Part shown: in pieces, positions 1-61,729 of the stretch | How the letters are laid out: every line of letters starts with the position of its first letter | How positions within the stretch are numbered: position 1 is the stretch's first letter | Assembly: GCA_052426225.1 (NCBI GenBank) | Contig: JBNJNM010000012.1 | Span: 1-64,000, forward strand | DNA length: 64,000 nucleotides | Direction of reading: 5' to 3' | DNA from: Zancudomyces culisetae HAW-14-8 | Lineage: Eukaryota > Fungi > Kickxellomycota | The notes under the pieces: model-generated | Database searches by the model: none | Told to the model about the DNA's origin: nothing | What the model saw: the letters and a program-made list of their open reading frames with translations, nothing else | Made by a program: the position numbers and the translations under genes

Positions 1-1269
1 CCCCTCTAACCCTACCCTAACCCTAACCCTAACCCTAACCCTAACCCTAACCCTAACCCTACACCCTAACCCTAACCCTAACCCTAACCCTACACCCTAC
101 CCTACCCTACACCCTAACCCTACCCCTAACCCTAACCCTACCCCTAACCCTAACCCTAACCCTAACCCCTAACCCTAACCCTAACCCTACCCTAACCCTA
201 ACCCTAATCCTAACCCTAACCCTAACCCTAACCCTAACCCTAACCCTAACCCTAACCCTAACCCTAACCCTAACCCTAACCCTAACCCTAACCCTAACCC
301 TAACCCTAACCCTAACCCTAACCCTAACCCTAACCCTAACCCTAACCCTAACCCTAACCCTAACCCTAACCCTAACCCTAACCCTAACCCTAACCCTAAC
401 CCTAACCCTAACCCTAACCCTAACCCTAACCCTAACCCTAACCCTAACCCTAACCCTAACCCTAACCCTAACCCTAACCCTAACCCTAACCCTAACCCTA
501 ACCCTAACCCTAACCCTAACCCTAACCCTAACCCTAACCCTAACCCTAACCCTAACCCTAACCCTAACCCTAACCCTAACCCTAACCCTAACCCTAACCC
601 TAACCCTAACCCTAACCCTAACCCTAACCCTAACCCTAACCCTAACCCTAACCCTAACCCTAACCCTAACCCTAACCCTAACCCTAACCCTAACCCTAAC
701 CCTAACCCTAACCCTAACCCTAACCCTAACCCTAACCCTAACCCTAACCCTAACCCTAACCCTAACCCTAACCCTAACCCTAACCCTAACCCTAACCCTA
801 ACCCTAACCCTAACCCTAACCCTAACCCTAACCCTAACCCTAACCCTAACCCTAACCCTAACCCTAACCCTAACCCTAACCCTAACCCTAACCCTAACCC
901 TAACCCTAACCCTAACCCTAACCCTAACCCTAACCCTAACCCTAACCCTAACCCTAACCCTAACCCTAACCCTAACCCTAACCCTAACCCTAACCCTAAC
1001 CCTAACCCTAACCCTAACCCTAACCCTAACCCTAACCCTAACCCTAACCCTAACCCTAACCCTAACCCTAACCCTAACCCTAACCCTAACCCTAACCCTA
1101 ACCCTAACCCTAACCCTAACCCTAACCCTAACCCTAACCCTAACCCTAACCCTAACCCTAACCCTAACCCTAACCCTAACCCTAACCCTAACCCTAACCC
1201 TAACCCTAACCCTAACCCTAACCCTAACCCTAACCCTAACCCTAACCCTAACCCTAACCCTAACCCTAA
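1..1269. repeat. Telomeric array (CCCTAA)n = (TTAGGG)n, chromosome end
   Basis: Continuous CCCTAA hexamers from base 1. There are a few indel variants in the first ~220 bp and the array is perfect thereafter. Confidence 0.99.
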
Positions 1270-1560
1270 CCCTATCCCTATCCCTATCCCTATCCCTATC
1301 CCTATCCCTATCCCTATCCCTATCCCTATCCCTATCCCTATCCCTATCCCTATCCCTATCCCTATCCCTATCCCTATCCCTATCCCTATCCCTATCCCTA
1401 TCCCTATCCCTATCCCTATCCCTATCCCTATCCCTATCCCTATCCCTATCCCTATCCCTATCCCTATCCCTATCCCTATCCCTATCCCTATCCCTATCCC
1501 TATCCCTATCCCTATCCCTATCCCTATCCCTATCCCTATCCCTATCCCTATCCCTATCCC
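1270..1560. repeat. Variant telomeric block (CCCTAT)n = (ATAGGG)n, 48 copies plus CCC
   Basis: Abrupt in-register switch from CCCTAA to CCCTAT at 1270. The block is homogeneous to 1560. Confidence 0.97.
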
Positions 1561-1816
1561 GTTCCATATCCCAAAATCAATCGAATCTTCATGAAAACTG
1601 CTAACATAATCGCTTCTTTGACTGCAAAGTTATCAACCTGAATGAGAAACTCTACTAAAGAAGCTGAACTTGATAATAATTAGCAAAGTCCTATCACGCT
1701 TAAATACATTGCAGTTAAAAACAGTAACGCTCCTGGAACTCAAAAGCTAGCTAAAATCATTGAAGCTCGCTGTTTTACAATAATTTAAAATGCCATCAAT
1801 GAATAAATAAACAGAA
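1561..1816 (+). pseudogene. Decayed coding relic abutting the telomere; putative 5'-truncated ORF1 of a Penelope-like element (continues at 7816)
   Basis: One codon-like frame with 4 stops (VPYPKINRIFMKTANIIASLTAKLST*MRNSTKEAELDNN*QSP...KLAKIIEARC). Composition matches 7816-8300, the other flank of the LTR insertion. Confidence 0.45.
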
Positions 1817-2146
1817 TGTCATAAACTAATATTAAACAGTTTAATTTAAATTAACAAACAATATCAAACATGATTTGGATGAATCAGAAATATATTTTTA
1901 AACATGTTTAATATTGAAACTAGCACAAAACACAACTTTAAATTATATAGTTCATAATTTAACTACTTTCTATTTATGCAACATTTTAGTCTTTAATATT
2001 AAATTTATATATTACAAACAAAATATTTAAATTGCATACGTTATTATTTCAGAAAAACTTATCTGACATCAATTGTCAACATTAAATATATTTTATAGTA
2101 GTGCTAAATAATCACCAAATTACACCAAAATAGATAATTTCATGAA
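1817..2146 (+). repeat. 5' LTR of element 1
   Basis: Starts TGTCATAAACT and aligns along its length with 7492-7815. The 3' end is eroded. Confidence 0.9.
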
Positions 2147-2157
2147 GTTTGTCAGAT
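2147..2157 (+). promoter_or_regulatory. Self-priming primer-binding site (Tf1-type)
   Basis: GTTTGTCAGAT directly follows the 5' LTR. It is complementary to ATCTGACA(A/T)C inside the LTR (~2061 and ~7729). There is no TGG tRNA-type PBS. Confidence 0.7.
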
Positions 2158-2264
2158 CAATATATAATATCTTATACTATCTTGTCAGAGAATAATTACA
2201 TAGACCTAAATGCACTAGTAACAATGACTGTAAGTCATTTTAATTAATTAAATAAGATGGCAAT

Positions 2265-2652
2265 TGTCACGACTTGACACTAAGTACTATATGTTTACTT
2301 GGCTATGATTTATTTAATAATACTACGAGATGAAAAGTATTTTATTGCTAAAGTTTCTTAAAGCAATAAAATCTTTGTCCATATATAGTTTTACAATATA
2401 CAAAAATAATTGTAAAACATAATAAAATCTACACTTAAGCTATAACTTAAAACTAAATATTATTAATTGTCAGCTCCACAAATAACATATTAATATGGGG
2501 TAAAACCAAATTTTTTAAAATTATTAATTCTTACTCCATATTAATAATTTATTGATTATTAATTAAAAAGGAGAAAACGTTAATAAATTTAACATTTGCT
2601 ATTTTTAATAACATATTGTAAATAGCAATAATGTCATGAATGGATCATGACA
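2265..2652 (-). repeat. Solo LTR, family B, inserted at the start of element 1 gag
   Basis: Termini TGTCACGACTTGACA...TGGATCATGACA. Homologous to 43381-43741 and to the copies at 51.3-52.5 kb. Flanks GCAAT/GTAAC. Orientation inferred from the similar terminus next to a PPT at 44277. Confidence 0.8.
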
Positions 2653-3553
2653 GTAACCCAATTAGACGATCCTCATCTCCGTTAAATATGTTAAGAATTA
2701 ATCAAGCAAACGTGTTACCAGTGGCTAGAGAACCAAGAGTAGCAGATCCTGAATACTTTAGTGGCAATAGAGACCAACTAAGAAACTTTATAGCACAAGT
2801 CCAACTAGTCATACAAGCTCAACCCTCAAGATTTTCAACAGATACTCAGAAAGTCGTTTTTGCTTCTACTTTCCTTCGTGGTCCTGCTTTCTCGTGGTTA
2901 CAACCGTTTCTAGAATCTGATGATCATGAACCAATCCTGGAAAATTTTGACATTTTCATAAACAAACTTCATCGTGTTTTCGGAAATCCACACCAATCTT
3001 CAACAGCTGAACGTCAACTCAGAAAACTTCGCCAGTTGGGATCCGCAGCCACCTATGCTACTGATATTCGTCGTATTTCCACACTTATGTCCTGGCATGA
3101 CGCAGCACTCTGTAGCCAATTTTATGAAGGACTTAAAGAAGAGATTAAGGATTTATAAGCCCGTTTTGATAGATCAAACAACTTTTCAGAATTTATTGAC
3201 CTCGCCATAAAAATTGACAATAGACTATTTGAAAGAAACCTTGAAAAATCGTTTTGCCCTCGCCCAATGCACACTCAAAATTTGGATAACTCTACACCAT
3301 CAATAAACAATTTATTAACATAACACAGCCTCGGGTGCAACAAATGGAAATTGACGGAACTTCATCTCGTCGCCCACCACTCACTCAGACTGAAAAACAA
3401 CGCCGCCTCGATCTTAATCTTTGTCTATACTGTGGTAATCCTGATCATGTCATTTCATCTTGTCCTCGTCGCCCGCAAATAAAGGTACCAAATACTATAT
3501 TTGCAAGCATTATTAAGGAAAACAATTTAGCTCAAGTCAATTTTCGGACGTAG
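2653..3553 (+). pseudogene. gag: gag of element 1 (retrotransposon gag domain plus CCHC knuckle), interrupted by stops
   Basis: ORFs 2640-3158 and 3335-3553: PEYFSG..FLRGPAFSW..LRQLGSA, MEID, CLYCG..H..C. The first codons of the 2640 ORF come from the inserted LTR. Confidence 0.9.
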
Positions 3554-3769
3554 TCTTGAGTGTATCTAATTAACCCAAACCTTCCCTTACAACCAAAAAT
3601 CTTTATCCTTTAAGTATTGCCGGTAATGAAACATCCGGAAGTTTATATCAAGCTGAAGTAAATTTACCTTTACAATTTATCAATAAAATACACACTACTG
3701 AAATAACCAATCTAACACATATATTAAATGTAAAAGATTCATTCTACCAATCTAACTATAACTCTGAAA

Positions 3770-3980
3770 ATAAACCTGAAACCAAATCTGAAGTCAAACC
3801 TGAACTTAATACTGAAATCAAACCTGAACTTAAACCTGAACTTAAACCTGAACTTAAACCTGAACTTAAACCTGAACTTAAACCTGTAACCATATCTTAA
3901 CTTATAATTAAAAATAATCCCGTAATTCACTCATAACCTGAACTTAAGCCTGAACTTAAGCCTGAATTTAAGCCTGAATC
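3770..3980 (+). repeat. 12-bp minisatellite AAACCTGAACTT (KPEL repeats) in the gag-protease spacer
   Basis: Perfect copies at ~3820-3885 with degenerate copies on both sides. Confidence 0.85.
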
Positions 3981-4046
3981 TATACCTGACTGCAACTTAT
4001 AAATTAATTCCACAATCAATAAGAATCTGACCTGGAACATTTAACT

Positions 4047-7000
4047 ATGTCAACAAATAAAGTATACTCTCACCTTATAGTATCTGTAACCCTTCGGGTA
4101 AACAATAACCCGATAAAAATCGTTGCCATGATTGATTCGGGTGCAACTAATTGCTTCATTGATTCTACTTTTGCCAAGACTAATAACATTCCGTTAGTAT
4201 TAAAAAAATTATCAATTCCACTACTAGTAATTGCCGGAAGATTTATTTCGTTAGGCTCCATAACACTCAATACAATACCAATTCAACTTAACACCTATAA
4301 TCATCACAAAACTATATCTTTTGATGTAACCAAATTGGGAAAATACCCTGTAATTATTGGAATAAACTGGCTGAGAACCCATAATCCACACATAGAGTGG
4401 GATTTAGATATGTTGTATTTCATATCTGAATATTGCCAAAATAATTGTAGTAAACAACAAAATCTATGTTCTACACACACAATAACTTGCACATTAATTC
4501 CAGAAAATTCAGAAATAACACATATACCATCGAGATATTCTGAATTTAAAGATGTATTCGACGAAAAAGCAGCTAATAATTAACCATCTCATCGTACATA
4601 TGATCATAAAATTTCGTTAACACCAGGCTCACAACCACCATTTGGACCAATTTATTCAATATCTGTAACATAACTCGCAGCACTTCGTGAATATTTGAAA
4701 GAAAATTTAGACAAAGGTTTTATTCATCCTTCATCATCTCCTGCTGGCTCGCCTATACTTTTTGTAAAAAAGACTGATGGATCTTTAAGATTATGCGTTT
4801 ATTATAGAGGATTAAATAACTTGACAATTAAATACAGGTATCTCTTACCTTTAATCGGAGCGTTACTCGACAGATTCAGTCAAGCGAAAATGTTTTCTAA
4901 AATCGATTTAAGAGGCGCTAATAATGTATAAGAATCGCTAATGGAGAAGAATGGAAATCTGCATTTTGTACGAGATACGGTCACTATGAAAATAGAAATA
5001 TGCCATTCGGACTCTGCAATGCTCATGCATCGTTTTAATATTTCATGAAAGATGTATTATCTGACTGCTTAGATAGTTTTGCAGTAGTATATTTATATGA
5101 TATACTGGTATATAGTACAATTAGAATACTATATTAAGCATGTAAAAGAGTTATTAAGAAGACTCCGAAATAATTCACTATATGCTAAACTGGAAAAATG
5201 ACGAATTCACAAAACAGAAGTCGAATTTTTGGGATATATTGTTTCCGATAAAGGGGTAAGTATGGATATAACAAAGACAATAGCTGTAAATGCATGGCCT
5301 GCACCAACCTCAATAATAGTAATTCAAACGTTCCTTGGTTTTGCAAATTTAAATAGAAAATTTATATTGTATTATTCAAAGATTGTGACACCTATAACAA
5401 AATTGTTACGAAAAAATGAAAAATGGAACTGGAGCACTCAAGCACAAAACTCTTTCGATCAATTCAATAATGCATTTACAACTGCAACTATTTTAAAATA
5501 TTTTGATCTGAATAAATCAATTACTATCGAAACTGATGCATCAGACTTCGCAATTCAAGGAGTTATATCACAACGCAACGATAATAACAATTTACATCCT
5601 ATAGCATATTATTCCAGAAAGTTACAACCTGCTGAAATCAACTACGAAATTTATGATAAAGAAATGTTAGTCATAATTGAGGCTTTTAAAGAATGGAAAT
5701 CATACCTCGAAGGAGCATTACATCAAATTACGGTTTTAACTGACCATAAAAATCTAGAATATTTTACTACCACTAATACTAAGAATAGGCGTCAAGCACG
5801 ATGGGCTGAATTATTAGGAAATTCTAATTTCATTATTAAATACGCAACTGGTTCATCTAACGGGATACCCGATGCTTTGTCCCGACGCCCGGATCATTTT
5901 CCTAAAGAGGGGGGTGACGCTCTACGTAATAATAAAAGTTTGCTAAAGCCAGAACAATTGATAATTGCAGCAGTAGAACCATTGGTTGCTTATAAATTTG
6001 ATAAAAATATATTAAATAGTAGCTACAAAAAAGATATTAAAGTTAATTTCATTATTTCTAAATTGAAACATATGAACAATTCATTTAACTCTGAATATCT
6101 AAACATAAAGAATTATAAATGCGACAATGAAATATTTACTTTTAAATGTAAAACATAAATTCCAGATAACATTGAAATCAAACTACTACTACTCAACCAA
6201 TTTCACGATTCGTCTATTGCTGGACACTCGGACATTCTAAAACCTTTGAACTGATTTCAAGATACTATTATTGGTCAAAAATGAGAATAATGATTAAAAA
6301 TCATATTAACTCATGCGATCAATGTTGCAGATGTAAACCGATATGACACTAACCAAATGGTCAACTACAACCTTTACAGATTCCAGAAAAACCGTGGGAA
6401 TCAATTTCTATGAATTTTATTGTTGGGTTACCATTGTCACAAACTTACGATTCAGTATTGGTTATTATAGATAGACTAACAAAAATGGCGCATTTTATTC
6501 CAACAAATAACAATATCAACGCACCACAAACAGCAAAACTATTTATCAATAACATATTTAAACTTCACGGACTGCTAAAAGATATCGTCTCTGATAGTGG
6601 TTCTATCTTCACTTCAAAATTTTGGAATACTATTACCAAAGTATTAAATATAAAATTAAATATGTCAACAGCATACCATCCACAAACGGATGGTCAAACG
6701 GAACGAGTAAACCAAGTTTTAGAACAGTATATCAGTTTTATTGTAACTACAACCAAACATACGGGCATGATTTATTAGCACTTGCAGAATTTGCATATAA
6801 TAACTCAGAACACTCAACTACAAAATTTTCACCATTCTACGCTAATACTGGATATCATCCTTCAATATTTCCATCAAATATTTTGACTTCACCCAGTAAC
6901 TCGCCCATAATCACAGATTTAACTCAGAAAATGTCACAAATTTACAAGGAACTTATAAAAAATATTAAAAAATGCAAATGAAAGATATGCTAAAGCATAT

Positions 7001-7479
7001 AATAAAAACAGACAAACAGAACCCGAGTTTAATATAGATTCAAAAGTGTGGATAAATATAAATATATTAAAACTAACAGACCAAATAACAAACTAGATTA
7101 TACTAAATTAGGTCCATTCACAATAGTTATATAATTAAGCAAAGTAGCATACGAACTTCAACTTCCTACGACTATGAAAGTACATCCTGTCTTTTACGTT
7201 TCCCTTCTAGAACCAGTAACTAACAACACTATTGAAGACCGAATTCATGAAACTCCATTACCGGTACTAGTTGATGGAATATCAGAATACAAAGTCGAAC
7301 AAATATTAGACAGTCGTATTAAATATAATAAACTACAATATCTAGTGGACTGGAAAGGGTACGATGCAATCGAAAAAACTTGGTAACCAGCCGAACATCT
7401 AACAAATACAAAAGAACTTGTGGAAAAGTACCATAATGAAAACCCGAATAAACCAATGTCGCTCAGAGATCGACACTAA
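4047..7479 (+). pseudogene. pol: pol of element 1 (PR-RT-RH-IN-chromodomain), fragmented
   Basis: ORF fragments at 4047, 4695, 5229, 6410, 6622 and 7174 in gypsy domain order. Confidence 0.93.
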
Positions 7480-7491
7480 GAGCGTGAATAC

Positions 7492-7815
7492 TGTCATAAA
7501 CTAATATTAAACAGTTTTAATTTAAATCAACAAACAATATCAAACATGATTTGGATGAATCATAAATATGTTTTTAAACATGTTTAATATTGAAACTAGC
7601 ACAAAATACAACTTTAAAGTATTTTAATAATAACTACTTTCTATTTATGCTACATTTTAGTCTTAAATATATATTTATATATTCAAACAAAAAGTTTAAA
7701 TAGCATATATTATTCTTTCTGAAAACTTATCTGACAACAAGTGTCAACAATAAATATATTTTATAGTAGTACTTAATAATCACCAAATTACACCAAAATA
7801 TACAAGTTTATGACA
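7492..7815 (+). repeat. 3' LTR of element 1
   Basis: TGTCATAAACT...AGTTTATGACA (11-bp terminal inverted repeat), preceded by a purine-rich tract. Confidence 0.93.
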
Positions 7816-9421
7816 CTGATAAACAAAAAAAGTAAAGTACTCTATACTAACATCACTTTAGATTTAAAATCATTGCTTCTATTACTTCACTTGCTGATAC
7901 AATCACAAAATTTGAAGCTGACCTCCTCAATATCTTTTAAATTTAACTTCAAATTTTTAAGATTAATTTCAACTCAGAAAACTAAAAAATCGGAAAATTG
8001 CTGAAGCTAAGAAGGCTATAAAGAAACGAGAACTAGAACATAACTTGTTGACCGTAGATACACAAGATAGTTTAAAAGACAAAGATATGTATATTATGGC
8101 AACAAATTGCGTCGAAACCATCAACCAACAAAACCAAAATATCAAAGATTATTGCAGAAGTAAAATCACAAAGGATAGCTAAAAAACTACAAATCCAACA
8201 AAAGACATTCAATTAACAATAAATAAAGAGTAATTAACAACACAAATCTATACAAAAGTTTACATGGCGCCAAAGAAGGAATCACAACATAATATTCAAA
8301 AAGAAAGTAAAACACAGTTTTTACTTCAAATATCATTACCATCAACAATTACTAAGTAACTTTACCAAAAATACAACAAAGTCAACTAAAAATTATTCAG
8401 CTATATTTACTTTTGTTCACAACATGACTTCCAAATCTGATAGTAAACAGCTTATATTAAAAAATTGAATTAAACACATATCTCAATTACTTAACAATGA
8501 AGTACATTACATTGACCTTTCTTTTTATAATACCACTCTTCTTTTTACCAAAAGTTATATTACTTTAACAACTTTGATGACAAATTTAAGAAATTAAACT
8601 GAAATGCTTGAGTAAAAATTTTTAATACCATCACTCCTAAACTCACAGTGAAAATTAAATCTTTATACCAAAAGTTATCAATGATATCACTATGACGGAA
8701 GTATTAACATAATATAATAATATCACATGGCCCTGTAATTATGGATACACTAGAATATCACAAACAAGTATTGATAATATTAAACAACAATAACAATAAT
8801 GTACAAATTTGTGATAACTCAGATGACATCGATGATCAAGTATTTAATAATACATCTATAAATACTAATTAACTTCTTTTCTACAATTTATTATCGAAAA
8901 AGCTAAAAAGTCTACTACATAAAGACAATTAATCTATTACCGAATAACTACATATTAATTAAAATCCATATAACGCTAATTGAATTTCGACCAATTACAT
9001 CTGCTACCAATTGGATAATAAACATTCTATATAAAACAATAGAATATATTAATTGGTTAAGAAAACCCAGTAATCTAAAAATTATCTAGAATTGATCAAA
9101 CACTTGAAAACAAAGTTATTCCTAATAACTACATCATAGGATCATTCGATGTTGATACTTAAAATCATTAATTAGAATCAAAACTATGTCAGTACTATTA
9201 TTATATTGACCAAATCTCAATAAATAACTCATGCCACAAATATTATTTGTGAATCCAACTATTTTATGTATCATAAAACTGTATTTAAATATATTATTGT
9301 TATCAAAATGAGATTAATGCAACAGACCTATGGGCAATGTTTATATTTCAACCGCAAGATATTATTTTGAAAAAATATTTCATTCATTAATACAGAAATA
9401 TTAACAATAATTCTTGATAAC
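7816..9421 (+). mobile_element. Decayed Penelope-like element (PLE): coiled-coil ORF1 relic (7816-~8300) and reverse transcriptase relic (~8320-9421)
   Basis: Hand translation gives GPVIMDTLEY..L (8729), PNNYILIKIHITLIEFRPITSATNW (8940-9014), IIGSFDVDT (~9133), ICESNYFMY..IKMR (~9245), PMGNVYI, and YRNINN = eroded YRYIDD (9391-9408). Order and spacing fit PLE RTs. Upstream are helical K/E/A-rich stretches (RKIAEAKKAIKKRELEH). It appears cut at 9422 by a TGTTA-starting sequence. Confidence 0.75.
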
Positions 9422-9710
9422 TGTTAATAACAACGAGATGTTTATAACTGAGACTATGGGTTTGTTATTCTTATTATGAATTTATTAGTAGATGTATGTA
9501 TTTAAAATAATATATTTTTAGATGAGTTATTAAATTTATATATTTCTCTGATGAATACAACGGAATTTCGATGTTTATATAATTTATTATACAAGAAATT
9601 TACTATGATGAAAAACTAAAAGACAATATATTTTAGCAATAAAAATTTGATTATGTATAATCAATTTAGAATAGATATCTACTTATCGTTTAACTTATAT
9701 TTTCATTTGT

Positions 9711-9835
9711 TGATTTTAACATGGATGTAGTTTATCGATTTTAACATTGATTTAGTATATAAATTTAAACATTGATTTAGTATATAAGTTTTAACATTCA
9801 TTTTGTATATCGATTTACCATTGATTTTATTTATT
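9711..9835. repeat. ~25-bp minisatellite, ~5 degenerate copies (GATTTTAACATTGATTTAGTATAT-like)
   Basis: Direct tandem copies visible in the sequence. Confidence 0.75.
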
Positions 9836-9854
9836 ATTTTCGCATAGATATTAT

Positions 9855-10063
9855 TGTCGTGATATCGGTAACTATATTATGTATCTTTACTAACTTAACC
9901 ATATGGCTATATGATTACTTAACTTAACCTTAACTAACTACTTTACTGAATACCCTATTTCACTTGTGCGTCTTTAAGCACTTATATATATTTAAATATG
10001 TATTGAATTAATTATGCTCCTACTCCGTGTTTCATGTTTCTGAATGTGAACGGTGTCACGACA
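9855..10063 (-). repeat. 3' LTR of element 2 (209 bp)
   Basis: TGTCGTGA...TCACGACA inverted termini, adjacent to the PPT. Confidence 0.85.
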
Positions 10064-12263
10064 TCATCTCCTCCCTCAATTAAGAGGTCCACTTCACTGT
10101 TTCTAAATTTGTTCCATGGTCTTCTTATTGTTTTTTTGTTTCTTTTATTCGCTCGTTTTAATCTGTCGTGATGTACTAAATATTCGAATATTTCACCATT
10201 AAGATGAGCGCAGTTTAAATGTGTTAAATGGTGTTTTTTCAATAATTTGAATGAGCCAGCAATCTAAGGTTCCAATTTTTTCCTGTTAAATTTTTTTACT
10301 AGTACCCAATCGTTGATTTCCAATGGTTGAAAATTTATTTTCTTATCGCAAAAATTTTTCATTTTATCAGCAAAATTTTTTTGGTTTTTTATGGCATTTT
10401 TCCTGACTTTATTTTGTTCGCGAATTCAGTTAATTACCTTATCCCAAGCCTTATTCAAATTATTTTTTGACTTTATAAACGGTGGTTCTGTATCTCCTGG
10501 AAATTTTGGTATTTGTCCGAAAACTAAGTAATATGGAGATATACCGGTCGATCGATTTATGCAATACGTGCGGCCCATGTGGCTTGAGGTAGGAATATAT
10601 CCCAATTAGTTTTTGTATTGTTAACCATTTTTGCTATTGCTGTCGAGATGATTCCATTCACTCGCTCGGTTTTTTTATTCATTTGTGGATGGTAAGCGCT
10701 AGTGAGTTTGTGATTTACTTCTAGTATTCTTAAATATGTTCTTAATGTTTCTGCTGTAAACTGTTTACCTCTATCACTTATAATTTCTTTTGGGCAACCA
10801 AACGTTAACATAATATTTTTAAATATAAATTTGGCAGTTGTCTCTGTAGTTGCATCGGTCGTAGCTTGTGTTATGACCCACCCTGTTAGGTAGTCTACCG
10901 CGACTAGAATCCACTTGTATCCTCTCTTTGTTTTCGGTAGGGGGCCGATAAAATCTATCCCCCATCTGGAAAAACCTTTGTCTGCTGGTTTCAATGGGTG
11001 TAGTGGTGCTAATGTTCCTTTGCCTTTAGCTGATAATTGGCAAGCCTCGCACTTTGCCAATTCCGCTGTTATCGTTTGTCGCATATTCGGCCACCAGCAA
11101 CGGAGCTTCATCAGGTTGTACACGTTGTTTATTCCTAGGTGTGCTGCACTTACATGGTAAGCATTTATTAAATCTTCTCTTTGATTTAGATGTATATACG
11201 GTAAATATTGTTATTTACCTTCCTATATAAAATGTTTTTAACGTATTCAAATTTGCTTCTTTATTTATCGAATTGGTGTCAATATTATCTGGTTTTTCGT
11301 TATAGCCATCCTTTATACAATCTATAACTAGTTCAGGCCATTCATTGTTTCCATACTGTTAATAAACTCTTTTCTTGATAACGCATCCGCTCCCACAATT
11401 TCCTTTCCCTTGATATATTTGATCTCCGGGTTTAGATATTGCCATTCTTCTAGCCACCTAGCGATCCTTCCTGTTGGTTCTTTTTTTTAAAAATCGATCT
11501 CAGTGTCCTATGGTCTGTATGTACTGTTACTCCGTTAATAAGGTAATGTTACCATGTTTTAAATGCATGAATAATTGCTAACATTTCTCTTTCATTTACT
11601 GAATAATTTTGTTCCGCTTTATTTAACACTCTAGATTCGAATGCGATGGGGACTCGACCTACTTCCTGATCTTGTAACAGAACCCCTCCTATTGCTACTC
11701 CGCTGGCATCCGATTCGATAACGAACTTTTTATCCCTTCAGGTGGATACAATCTGTCTGCATTAGTTATTGCTTCCTTTATTTGACTATTTGCTTTGTTT
11801 CTTCCACTGTCCAGGTAACCTTTTCATTAATGTTTTTATAACCATGACTTAGATTGTACAGAGGTTTCGCCATGTTTGCGAATCCTGCAAGAAATTTTCT
11901 GTAATAATTGCTTAGTCTTAAATATTCCAATAGTTGTCGAATATTATTATGTTTTTCCCATTTTATATTTCTTCGGCATTATCTTTGCATGGACTAATAA
12001 TACTGTTATTAATTAGATGACCTAAAAATATAATTCTTTTGACTCCAAAACTACATTTTTCTAGATATAAATTCAACTTGTGTTCAGACAGTTTATTTAG
12101 TACTACATTTAGTTGATTTCATGTTCTTCCATTGTCTTGAATAAATCAAAATGTCATCTAAATATACCAACACAAATTCATTCAAGATTCTCTTAAAATA
12201 TTGTTCATCAGTCTCTATAAAGTGCTCGGTGCATTGCACAATCTGAACGGCATCGCTAGTTAT
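9855..12263 (-). mobile_element. 3' half of a non-chromoviral Ty3/gypsy element (element 2): RT-RH-IN, PPT and 3' LTR
   Basis: Integrase ORF 10557-11123 (WGIDFIGPLP, ISDRGKQF, YHPQ); RNase H SDASG; RT YLDD relic; PPT GAGGGAGGAGATGA at 10064-10077. The 5' part is lost. Confidence 0.92.
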
Positions 12264-59226: not shown

Positions 59227-60174
59227 ATGGATGTTCAGGATATACTAAAGACGAACGCTGCCAAATTCAAAAGCACAAAGGTGGTGGGGAAGGTGGTTCC
59301 AGTACAATTCCAGCTGGATTTGATGGCAGCATACGATAGAAATATGATCGATGCGGAGAAATTCAATGCGGCAAAGGAGAAATCAACACCGGAGGCTGAG
59401 GAGATGCAGGAGGAGTATTTGAAGGAAATCAGTAGGGATGTCACGCAGTTGCTTGTAAACAAGCTGTTTGATCTCCCAATCAAAAAGGGTGATAATGAAG
59501 ATGGTGGAGTCGCCGAGGGACCTATGGCAGTGCTTCCAAAGCCACTTCTTCGGTTGAACAAGAAGAGCAAATCAATGTCAGCTTTGGAATTTGGGTCAAG
59601 CTCCCTGGACGATTTGGTGGTTCTGCCACGTGAAAAGCCGGTTCCAAAGGTCAAACCGCTGACCCGATGGGAGAAATTTGCGAAACTCAAGGGAATCCAA
59701 AAGAAAAAACGAACCAAGCTTGTATATGATGAAGATACCGACAAAATGGTTCCATCATGGGGATATAAGGGTGTCAACAAAAAATTGGAGGAACAATGGC
59801 TTATTCCAGTTCCTGATCACCAGAGCAACGATTTCGATGTTCGTAAACACTTGACTGATAACCGCAAGGAACGAGTTAGCAAAAACCAACGACGTGAAAA
59901 ACGCAATCTGGAAGAGCGGGCTGCTACTGAGGATGGATCAAAGAGCAAGATTGTCAAGTTGAGCAATCATACCCAACGCAAATCTCAGATCCAAAAGGTG
60001 TTGACCCTAACAAAAAATTCGTCAACGGCTAGTATGGGCAAGTTTGATAAGGTACACGAAGGAGAACCTAAAACGGTTAGAAGACAAAAACAGCAATTTA
60101 GACCAGTTGTTACAAAGAATATTAAGGACGAAATTCAACGCAACAAGGAGATTCTTGCCAAAATCAAAAAATAG
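59227..60174 (+). CDS. RRS1: Ribosome biogenesis regulatory protein Rrs1
   Basis: RDVTQLLVNKLF, LPREKPVP, TRWEKFAKLKGI, WGYKG and STASMGKFD. Intact 315 aa. Confidence 0.95.
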   Translation: MDVQDILKTNAAKFKSTKVVGKVVPVQFQLDLMAAYDRNMIDAEKFNAAKEKSTPEAEEMQEEYLKEISRDVTQLLVNKLFDLPIKKGDNEDGGVAEGPMAVLPKPLLRLNKKSKSMSALEFGSSSLDDLVVLPREKPVPKVKPLTRWEKFAKLKGIQKKKRTKLVYDEDTDKMVPSWGYKGVNKKLEEQWLIPVPDHQSNDFDVRKHLTDNRKERVSKNQRREKRNLEERAATEDGSKSKIVKLSNHTQRKSQIQKVLTLTKNSSTASMGKFDKVHEGEPKTVRRQKQQFRPVVTKNIKDEIQRNKEILAKIKK

Positions 60175-60367
60175 TTTTTTGCAACTTTATGATTCCTTTC
60201 ATATTTGTATAAATTTTTGAGTCTGTTTATAGCTTTCTTATTTATGATAAAAGTATATATATTATATTGTGTTTTCTTTTACACCAAGTTTGATAGAAAT
60301 AAAAACAACGAAAACTACAAGATTTTTCTGTATACAATATAAAGATCAAATTTCACTAGAACAGGGC

Positions 60368-61729
60368 CTACTCATCCTTCCTTGATTTTTTCGAAGAATT
60401 GGCTTTTACTGAGGAGTACTTCTCATAAACATCCAAATCGTCCTTGTTGTTGGTTCTAGACGATTTCTGGGGGTTGGGAGAAACAGTTTTACCTTCTTCA
60501 GGAAGGAATTCTTCAGTATAAGCGAAAAAGTCGGATAATTCACCACGAGCAGCAGCGAGGATAATGGTAGACAAGGTGCAAGCTGGTGACAAGTACAACA
60601 AGGCGGGTTGGGCAGCCTTGAAGGTATGCATTACAAACACAGTAGTTATCAAACCAAAGATATAGGCTACAAAACAAGTGTTGAAGTATGGTGTTTCAAA
60701 CTTGAATCCTTTTGACTTTCCTTTTAAAACTGATGGCAATGGTTGTTTTGGCACATAACCAACTTTCTTGAGATACTGGCTTCTGTCAAATCTTAGGCAG
60801 AGGGCAATATAGATTCCAGGAATGACAATGTCCCCCAGACCCAGCATCACAAAGGACTTGATTGGCTTTAGACCAAAGATGCCTGGTGTGTTTAAAATAT
60901 CCTTTGGAAAGAGCAGTTTTATGGGAGCGTCGAGGTTCTTGGCAACAGATACCATGACTTCGGTTCCAAAGACCCAGAAAATATCGTAGAAAAACAGACC
61001 CATGAGCATAATGATTCCAGTTTTGAAGGATTCTAGCTTCATGAGTTTGATTGCACCAAACGAAAAGGCCAGACCAATCAGGTTGGAGAGGATCCAGTTC
61101 TTTTCGAGTAGGAAATAGAGACCAGTGAGCACAGTCGACAGCCCCAATGTGATCAAGTGCAATTTGGTGAATTTGATCAAAAACTGTTCTTTTTGTTTGT
61201 GGACCAGGCTAAGGTAGTAGAGCGGTAGCTTGATGTTTGTTGTACCCTTGGCAATCGTAACAAGAGTGTGGGCGAGGGCGCCTATCCCGGCAACAGAAAA
61301 ATACACAGTCATCAGCATATTTACATAATCGACATTAAAGTATTTGAGAACAAGGTATAGAGAAAGCAGAGTGGCGGACCCGTACACTGGATACATGTAC
61401 GCATCTTGAGTAGTAAGACCCTCGGCTTCTTCATCGTCGCTGTCTTCCGAGTCGGAGTATTCCTGGAAGAATTTGGTTTTTTTCCTTTCGGGTCCCTAAT
61501 TTCAAAATAAAACATATATAAATAAATATAAGAGTTTTAGGTATTTAGGCTAAAAAGTAAAATTATACAAATAAAAAAAAGAAAGATAAAAAAAAACGAG
61601 TGTAAGGTAAGTGTATAGAGAGAAAAGAGTTACCTTTAGTTTTGTAATAGAGTTAAAAGATCCGTAATAAATGGGCAAGAGTGCCATTGAAGCAATGGCG
61701 CCATACGCAACGTACAAACCAGAACTCAT
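60368..61729 (-). CDS. HM13: Signal peptide peptidase (presenilin-type A22B aspartic protease); exons 61729-61634 and 61495-60368
   Basis: YDIFWVF, LGLGDIVIPG and QPALLYL motifs. A phase-0 GT..AG intron at 61633-61496 joins MSSGLY..TKLK to GPERKK..DAYMYP in frame. Confidence 0.95.

What the first reader, a model, noticed from the sequence alone, without database searches (positions are those of the whole stretch)
1561..9421. Telomere directly caps a hidden Penelope-like retroelement in chromosome-end-priming orientation
Seen: removing LTR element 1 (1817-7815) joins 1561-1816 to 7816-9421. This gives telomere, then a helical K/E/A-rich ORF relic, then an RT relic with PLE-type motifs (GPVIMD..Y, Y.L.KIH...RPI.S, SFDV, NYF..MR, eroded YRYIDD). 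All are on the strand carrying CCCTAA. None of the RT motifs appears in the ORF track. Established: endonuclease-less PLEs (Athena of bdelloid rotifers, Coprina of basidiomycetes) have a coiled-coil ORF1 before the RT, prime on the 3' G-overhang, and end up 5'-truncated and telomere-capped in this polarity. PLE RTs are the sister group of telomerase. Inference: this fungus has, or had, a terminal retroelement system acting alongside telomerase. I do not know of one described from this lineage. The element's 3' part is lost, so absence of a GIY-YIG endonuclease cannot be shown here.
Basis: partly seen in the sequence, partly recalled or inferred. Interest (0 to 1): 0.88.

Follow-up and report, generated by a model that had tools for sequence, protein, structure and literature searches.

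The report
Dead Penelope-like retroelement under every telomere
Directly under the telomere lies the wreck of a Penelope-like (telomerase-related) retroelement, but the same wreck, with the same two later transposon insertions, sits at about 20 chromosome ends, so it is a subtelomeric repeat copied as DNA and not a working end-extending retroelement system.

Summary
Removing the Ty3/Gypsy element (1817-7815, 5-bp target duplication) joins 1561-1816 to 7816-9421. The joined sequence is a decayed Penelope-like element (PLE) whose sense strand is the CCCTAA strand. A profile of its stop-free pieces, searched against 1.84 billion proteins, found only PLE-type reverse transcriptases (best E 3.6e-10, Smittium simulii). 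An independent PLE profile matches all other copies (i-E down to 6e-17; no hits in shuffled controls); the window's own copy matches only weakly.

The genome is Zancudomyces culisetae. The block lies in fixed orientation at its chromosome ends (5' part at 22 ends, RT part at about 20). Nearly all copies carry the same Gypsy insertion, the same 0.7-kb repeat inserted just after YxDD, the same stop codons and the same 5' junction. Homology between ends continues past the element, and no telomere tract lies on its inner side. No intact PLE exists in the genome; a TERT gene does. So a dead composite spread by exchange between chromosome ends.

An ancient telomere-primed arrival is plausible but not shown. 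Terminal Coprina-type PLEs are already known in other fungi, so this is a new member of a known kind. Other first-stage notes of this scan flagged the same element at other ends.

The parts
1..1270 (+). Canonical telomere array, C-rich strand (CCCTAA)n
   Evidence: Read directly; comparable arrays of about 180-240 units lie at the other ends.
1271..1560 (+). 48 perfect CCCTAT variant telomere units; other ends carry 4-28 units followed by degenerate telomere-like units
1561..1816 (+). 5' part of the PLE relic (region A), present at 22 chromosome ends with the same junction to the telomere-like repeats
   Evidence: 22 matches, 86-92% identity, + strand at contig starts and - strand at contig ends; same junction; weak colinear match to residues 55-143 of the Smittium simulii PLE protein P0002.
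1817..7815 (+). Decayed Ty3/Gypsy LTR retrotransposon nested in the PLE; LTRs at 1817-2145 and 7492-7815; target duplication CTGAT
   Evidence: The same insertion is present at the other ends (spacing, alignments). No fixed differences separate the 5' and 3' LTR sets.
7816..9420 (+). PLE relic: N-terminal ORF region, DKN-type motif (about 8723-8758), RT1-2 (8934-9014), RT3 (9139-9159), RT4 (about 9224-9340) and RT5 YxDD (9391-9411); many stops and frameshifts
9421..9858 (+). First 440 bases or so of a dispersed 0.7-kb repeat carrying a 25-bp minisatellite, inserted in the RT just after YxDD
   Evidence: internal copies on many contigs at 70-77% identity in both orientations; window 9411-9858 matches repeat positions 1-448; minisatellite at 9713-9812.
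9859..11200 (-). Unrelated LTR-element sequence (integrase ORF 10557-11123 on the minus strand) that ends the window's copy of the block; shared only with the C15 end

Best explanation
Positions 1561-9858 hold one copy of a subtelomeric block found at the chromosome ends of Zancudomyces culisetae (5' part at 22 ends, RT part at about 20). The core of the block is a dead Penelope-like retroelement, closest to elements of the related gut fungus Smittium simulii. It is Coprina-like in having no detectable endonuclease and in lying under the telomere with its sense strand on the C-rich strand. A Ty3/Gypsy element and a 0.7-kb dispersed repeat inserted into it, and it acquired stop codons. Only afterwards was the composite, together with flanking subtelomeric DNA, copied from end to end. 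The inferred route is recombination between chromosome ends, by break-induced replication or gene conversion. That exchange continues: some pairs of ends are 97-99% identical. The ends themselves are maintained by telomerase. Shown: the PLE identity, its death before the spread, the uniform structure and orientation at the ends, and the absence of any live copy. Inferred: the recombinational route, and that the founding copy reached a chromosome end by telomere-primed reverse transcription.
For: PLE identity. A profile of stop-free pieces found 24 proteins with E <= 1e-3 among 1.84e9. All 24 fit a PLE profile, whereas the window's LINE and Gypsy RTs do not. That family carries RVT_1 with PF26215 and, in some members, GIY-YIG. 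An independent PLE HMM matches the sense strand of all other copies with i-E down to 6e-17 and nothing in shuffled controls. The PLE profile run on the genome hits only the subtelomeric relics and the TERT gene, and none of the hundreds of LTR and LINE RTs. Spread as DNA. Region A lies at 22 ends and the RT part at about 20, always within 27 kb of a contig end and always in the same orientation. They share the same Gypsy at the same site, the same 0.7-kb repeat after YxDD, the same stops in 16-19 of about 20 copies and the same 5' junction. Homology between ends continues beyond the element. Some pairs of ends are 97-99% identical against a median of 87%. Telomerase: a TERT RBD and RT are at C8:1866327-1867975.
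Against: The mechanism of copying was not observed. A composite RNA copied in trans is unlikely but not formally excluded. 5' and 3' LTRs are no more different from each other than copies are, so insertion and spread were close in time or conversion has blurred the order. Absence of an endonuclease rests on failure to detect a short domain in decayed sequence. Placement among named PLE clades could not be tested, because no labelled Coprina or Athena reference was available.
Confidence: 0.8

Rival explanations
1. One reading: an endonuclease-less PLE family actively or recently extends chromosome ends by priming on the G-overhang, and each end acquired its copy by its own retrotransposition.
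For: Orientation and telomere adjacency fit the Athena/Coprina model. The RT is PLE-type. No GIY-YIG was detected.
Against: All copies share the same nested Gypsy, the same 0.7-kb insertion, the same stops and the same 5' junction. No intact copy exists. No telomere tract lies on the inner side. Homology continues past the element.
Confidence: 0.05
2. PLEs once colonised many ends independently by terminal retrotransposition. Today's uniformity, including the Gypsy insertion, results from later concerted evolution (gene conversion) among subtelomeres rather than from duplication of a single founder.
For: Near-identical pairs of ends show ongoing exchange. Coprina elements occupy almost every end in Agaricus and Tuber according to PMC13159263. 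Relatives occur in Smittium simulii, one with a short telomere-like tract upstream on the same strand.
Against: No trace of independent copies remains: no varied 5' ends and no inner telomere tracts. The present data cannot separate this from a single founder.
Confidence: 0.2
3. The composite (PLE plus nested Gypsy plus 0.7-kb repeat) is a non-autonomous unit. It is transcribed as a whole and copied onto chromosome ends by an RT supplied in trans.
For: The 5' boundary is the same at all ends and abuts telomere-like repeats. The genome holds many intact RT genes.
Against: No PLE-type RT is available in trans; only TERT is. Homology between ends runs beyond any plausible 3' end of the element. 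There is no 3' telomere-complementary tract and no hammerhead. An 8-10 kb transcript would have to read through two LTRs.
Confidence: 0.03
4. The motifs are chance or belong to another RT class (LINE, DIRS, group II, LTR).
For: Pfam RVT_1 did not match any single stop-free piece. The window's own copy scores weakly.
Against. Only PLE-type proteins were found, with colinear matches from the DKN motif to the thumb and no matches in shuffled controls. LINE and Gypsy controls do not fit the PLE profile.
Confidence: 0.02

Closest known systems
Coprina (endonuclease-less Penelope-like elements of fungi and other eukaryotes; Gladyshev and Arkhipova 2007, as summarised in PMC8557442 and PMC13159263)
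   Same: PLE-type RT with an N-terminal ADKNLG-type (DKN/DKG) motif, RT1-7 and thumb. No detectable GIY-YIG. An N-terminal region fused to or preceding the RT. Located at chromosome ends with the sense strand on the C-rich strand. Present at nearly every end, as reported for Agaricus bisporus and Tuber melanosporum.
   Different: Every copy is dead and identical in structure. There is no inner telomere tract, no variable 5' truncation, no hammerhead and no recognisable terminal repeats. The spread is explained by subtelomere duplication. The host is a Kickxellomycotina gut fungus, for which I found no published PLE description. Clade placement was not tested with labelled references.
Coprina-1_Alen of Ascochyta lentis (PMC13159263)
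   Same: A PLE at many chromosome ends of a fungus, in the same polarity, with a coiled-coil N-terminal part, a DKN motif, RT and thumb.
   Different: The A. lentis copies are flanked by telomere repeats on both sides, are nearly identical, are transcribed, and are present in one isolate and absent in another, which are signs of recent activity. The copies here have none of these signs that I could test.
Athena elements of bdelloid rotifers
   Same: Endonuclease-less PLEs at telomeres, with the polarity expected from priming on the G-overhang.
   Different: Athena forms arrays of 5'-truncated copies, each capped by telomere repeats, and has separate ORFs. Here there is one fixed structure per end.
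Shared subtelomeric blocks spread by recombination (yeast Y' elements; helicase-bearing subtelomeres of Magnaporthe, Ustilago and Agaricus var. burnettii; PMC7473861)
   Same: One block at nearly all ends in fixed orientation, with near-identical pairs of ends and end-specific insertions and deletions.
   Different: The core of this block is a retroelement wreck, not a helicase gene. No intact gene was seen in the part studied.
MoTeR telomeric retrotransposons of Magnaporthe oryzae (from my own knowledge, not checked here)
   Same: Variant telomere-like repeats lie at the telomere-facing 5' end of the element.
   Different: MoTeRs are non-LTR elements with a restriction-like endonuclease. Here the RT is PLE-type, and whether the CCCTAT array belongs to the element is unknown.

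Membership tests
Penelope-like elements (PLE) | RT homologous to PLE RTs rather than to LINE, LTR, DIRS or group II RTs | tested here: met
   Only PLE-type proteins were retrieved from 1.84e9. The PLE HMM hits all other copies, while the LINE and Gypsy controls and the genome's other RTs are not hit. The only other hit in the genome is TERT, the sister group of PLE RTs.
Penelope-like elements (PLE) | Conserved N-terminal DKG/DKN motif upstream of RT1 | tested here: met
   The relic's ..HIGPVIMDT.DY.. aligns with ADKNLGPSVVNTLAY of Smittium simulii P0001 and with ADKNLG of the other hits. The D-K-N residues themselves are eroded in the relic.
Penelope-like elements (PLE) | Hammerhead ribozyme motifs in the flanking or terminal repeats | tested here: not met
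   No Rfam family reached its gathering score in the window or in five loci from other ends. Decay could hide them.
Penelope-like elements (PLE) | LTR-like terminal repeats (pLTRs) or tandem arrangement | not tested
   The only long direct repeats seen in 1500-12000 are the Gypsy LTRs. The 3' end of the element was not delimited.
EN(+) PLEs (Penelope/Poseidon, Neptune, Nematis) | C-terminal GIY-YIG endonuclease | tested here: not met
   No GIY-YIG hit in any subtelomere at E <= 1. C-terminal parts of EN(+) PLEs find nothing downstream of the RT. This is weak negative evidence in decayed DNA.
Terminal EN(-) PLEs (Coprina/Athena) | Telomere-adjacent, with the sense strand on the C-rich strand | tested here: met
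   all copies lie within 27 kb of a contig end, + strand at contig starts and - strand at contig ends.
Terminal EN(-) PLEs (Coprina/Athena) | Telomere repeats at the element's 3' (centromere-side) end | tested here: not met
   No perfect or degenerate (>=29 of 36 bases) telomere-like tract in C13:8156-20563 or in window 1701-64000, and none in nine other tails.
Terminal EN(-) PLEs (Coprina/Athena) | Independent insertions: variable 5' truncation, each capped by telomere repeats | tested here: not met
   In the 20 ends examined, the element starts at the same base, CCC|(G/A)AAATCAATCG.
Coprina clade specifically | Groups with named Coprina RTs in a phylogeny | not testable with these tools
   No labelled Coprina, Athena or Neptune sequences could be obtained. 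The nearest relatives are unnamed proteins.

The most novel reading that the evidence does not exclude
A Harpellales-specific endonuclease-less PLE lineage founded the universal subtelomere, and the perfect (CCCTAT)n array kept at every end between element and telomere is still being made or homogenised. Possible sources are a second templating activity or telomerase template heterogeneity tied to the element's 5' cap. The same variant next to a PLE in Smittium simulii hints at this.
Probability: 0.08. Interest if true: 0.7.

Novelty: new member of a known kind. Interest (0 to 1): 0.3.

Why it matters
It adds an early-diverging fungal lineage (Kickxellomycotina, Harpellales) to the hosts of telomere-associated Penelope-like elements. 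It also shows how such an element ends up: as the dead core of a subtelomeric block shared by the chromosome ends. For annotation of this genome, it explains the first 8-12 kb of nearly every chromosome end. It says nothing new about how terminal PLEs work, because no copy is alive.

Tried and rejected
- Pfam on ten stop-free pieces gave no RVT_1 hit; the pieces are too short and decayed.
- MAFFT stacked non-overlapping pieces on top of each other. One chosen set tiled correctly and was used. The profile consensus printed served only to check model length.
- The look-up of sequencing runs listed no run, so expression and read-level checks were not possible and read laying was not used.
- RIP as the cause of decay is rejected. 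Differences between copies are mostly A<->T transversions, and the genome holds many intact transposon ORFs.
- The idea that the shared block ends at the element's 3' end is rejected. The apparent boundary is an insertion or rearrangement in two ends, and the other ends stay homologous beyond it.
- A first PLE HMM run with default filters found nothing. The same model with filters off gave the matches, and shuffled controls stayed empty.

Full report
What is in the window

The window starts with (CCCTAA)n to 1270, followed by 48 perfect CCCTAT units to 1560. From 1817 to 7815 lies a decayed Ty3/Gypsy element with LTRs at 1817-2145 and 7492-7815. Between the LTRs are Pfam hits for gag, protease, RNase H and integrase. 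In the other copies of this region the element is flanked by the 5-bp duplication CTGAT; in the window the left copy has drifted to CAGAA.

Is the relic a Penelope-like RT?

Pfam did not recognise any single stop-free piece. The same region exists at about 20 other chromosome ends, and stops and frameshifts differ in part between copies. I therefore tiled eleven natural stop-free pieces into an alignment of 120 columns, running from upstream of RT1 to beyond RT3, and searched it as a profile against 1.84 billion proteins.

- The search returned 24 proteins with E <= 1e-3. The two best are hypothetical proteins of Smittium simulii.
- The hits carry ADKNLG, PxFYxLxKxHKTPxxxRPI, SxDV, GxAMGTN, RYIDD, FLD and a thumb-like C-terminal region.
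- All 24 fit a profile built from twelve of them. The LINE and Gypsy RTs of the window do not fit it.
- A search with that profile retrieved a family whose precomputed domains are RVT_1, PF28514 and PF26215. Some members add a C-terminal GIY-YIG, which marks canonical PLEs.
- An HMM built from 97 of those proteins, none of them found by the relic itself, matches the sense strand of all other copies. Independent E-values go down to 6e-17 and there are no hits in shuffled controls.
- The PLE profile run on the whole genome hits only the subtelomeric relics and one other place, the RT domain of the TERT gene at C8:1866327. It misses the hundreds of LTR and LINE RTs.
- The window's own copy scores weakly (24.6 bits; tblastn E 4e-6 to the Smittium protein). 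It is 84-89% identical in DNA to the better copies.
- Region 1561-1816 matches residues 55-143 of the Smittium protein P0002. The match is weak (E 0.001-0.02 per copy) but recurs in many copies and is colinear with the RT matches.

The PLE reading stands.

Corrections to the anatomy

The sequence from about 9421 is not the end of the element. It is the first 440 bases or so of a 0.7-kb dispersed repeat with many internal copies in the genome. It inserted just after YxDD. At other ends the RT resumes behind it (FLD, KPxN, SxH, GE..R) and runs to position 726 of the 780-position PLE profile. The window's copy, and the copy at the C15 end, are cut at 9858 by unrelated LTR-element sequence. No GIY-YIG relic was found in any subtelomere and no hammerhead ribozyme. 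Both are weak negatives in DNA this decayed.

How the copies relate

Region A lies at 22 chromosome ends and region B at about 20. All copies are within 27 kb of a contig end and all have the sense strand on the C-rich strand.

- The spacing between A and B shows that the same Gypsy element sits at the same site at most ends. Alignments confirm this.
- No fixed differences separate the 5' and 3' LTR sets.
- In the 20 ends examined, the element starts at the same base, after degenerate telomere-like units.
- Particular stop codons are shared by 16-19 of about 20 copies, and the 0.7-kb repeat is shared too.
- Homology between ends continues beyond the RT.
- No perfect or degenerate telomere tract lies on the inner side, in 12 kb of C13 or in the rest of the window.
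- Median pairwise identity is 87%, but some pairs of ends are 97-99% identical.

These features are what duplication and continuing exchange of a subtelomeric block would produce. They are the opposite of independent telomere-primed insertions, which give varied 5' truncations, each capped by telomere repeats, and telomere tracts on both sides. That pattern is reported for Athena, and for Coprina-1_Alen in Ascochyta lentis (PMC13159263).

Organism and literature

A neighbouring gene product is 100% identical to a Zancudomyces culisetae protein. Terminal Coprina-type PLEs are known from basidiomycetes and ascomycetes, and are said to occupy almost every chromosome end in Agaricus bisporus and Tuber melanosporum. 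I found no report from Harpellales. Two other first-stage notes of this scan flagged the same element at other ends of this genome.

Verdict

The functional inference is too strong. What remains is the fossil of a probably endonuclease-less PLE, now the core of a shared subtelomeric repeat in a genome that has telomerase. Whether the founder arrived by priming on a chromosome end is plausible from its polarity and position, but it cannot be shown from these copies.

Noticed in passing
window 1271-1560; also L002-L020: Every chromosome end carries a perfect (CCCTAT)n array of 4-48 units between the canonical telomere and degenerate telomere-like units. Perfect arrays inside a block whose copies differ by about 13% must be young or kept homogeneous.
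   Followed up: partly
L045:9390-9407 (Smittium simulii contig MBFR01000287.1): A short CCTAA-CCCTAT-CCCTAT tract lies about 1.1 kb upstream of a PLE RT, on the same strand. It uses the same variant unit as in this genome. A second CCCTAACCCTAA tract lies at 4279-4290.
   Followed up: partly
window 7816-9858 and its roughly 20 copies: Differences between copies are dominated by A<->T transversions (about 500 of 1050 majority-to-minority changes). Transitions are fewer. This is an unusual spectrum and is not RIP.
   Followed up: partly
G000:C8:1866327-1867975 (minus strand): This is the telomerase reverse transcriptase gene (Telomerase_RBD, 74.6 bits). Its RT part is the only non-relic hit of the PLE profile in the genome.
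   Followed up: partly
G000 C8 start versus C13 end; C11 start versus C21 start: These pairs of chromosome ends are 97-99% identical over kilobases, which points to very recent exchange between non-homologous ends.
   Followed up: partly
window 9421-9858; internal copies such as G000:C9:1346123-1346866: A dispersed repeat of about 0.7 kb carrying a 25-bp minisatellite occurs at many internal sites in both orientations. Its type was not determined.
   Followed up: partly
G000, whole genome: There are many identical, fully open RT-bearing ORFs of 1225-1532 residues. Several LTR and LINE families therefore look recently active in this 27-Mb genome.
   Followed up: no
window 59227-61396: The first ordinary genes (RRS1 and signal peptide peptidase) appear only about 59 kb from the chromosome end. 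Everything before them that I examined is transposon-derived.
   Followed up: no
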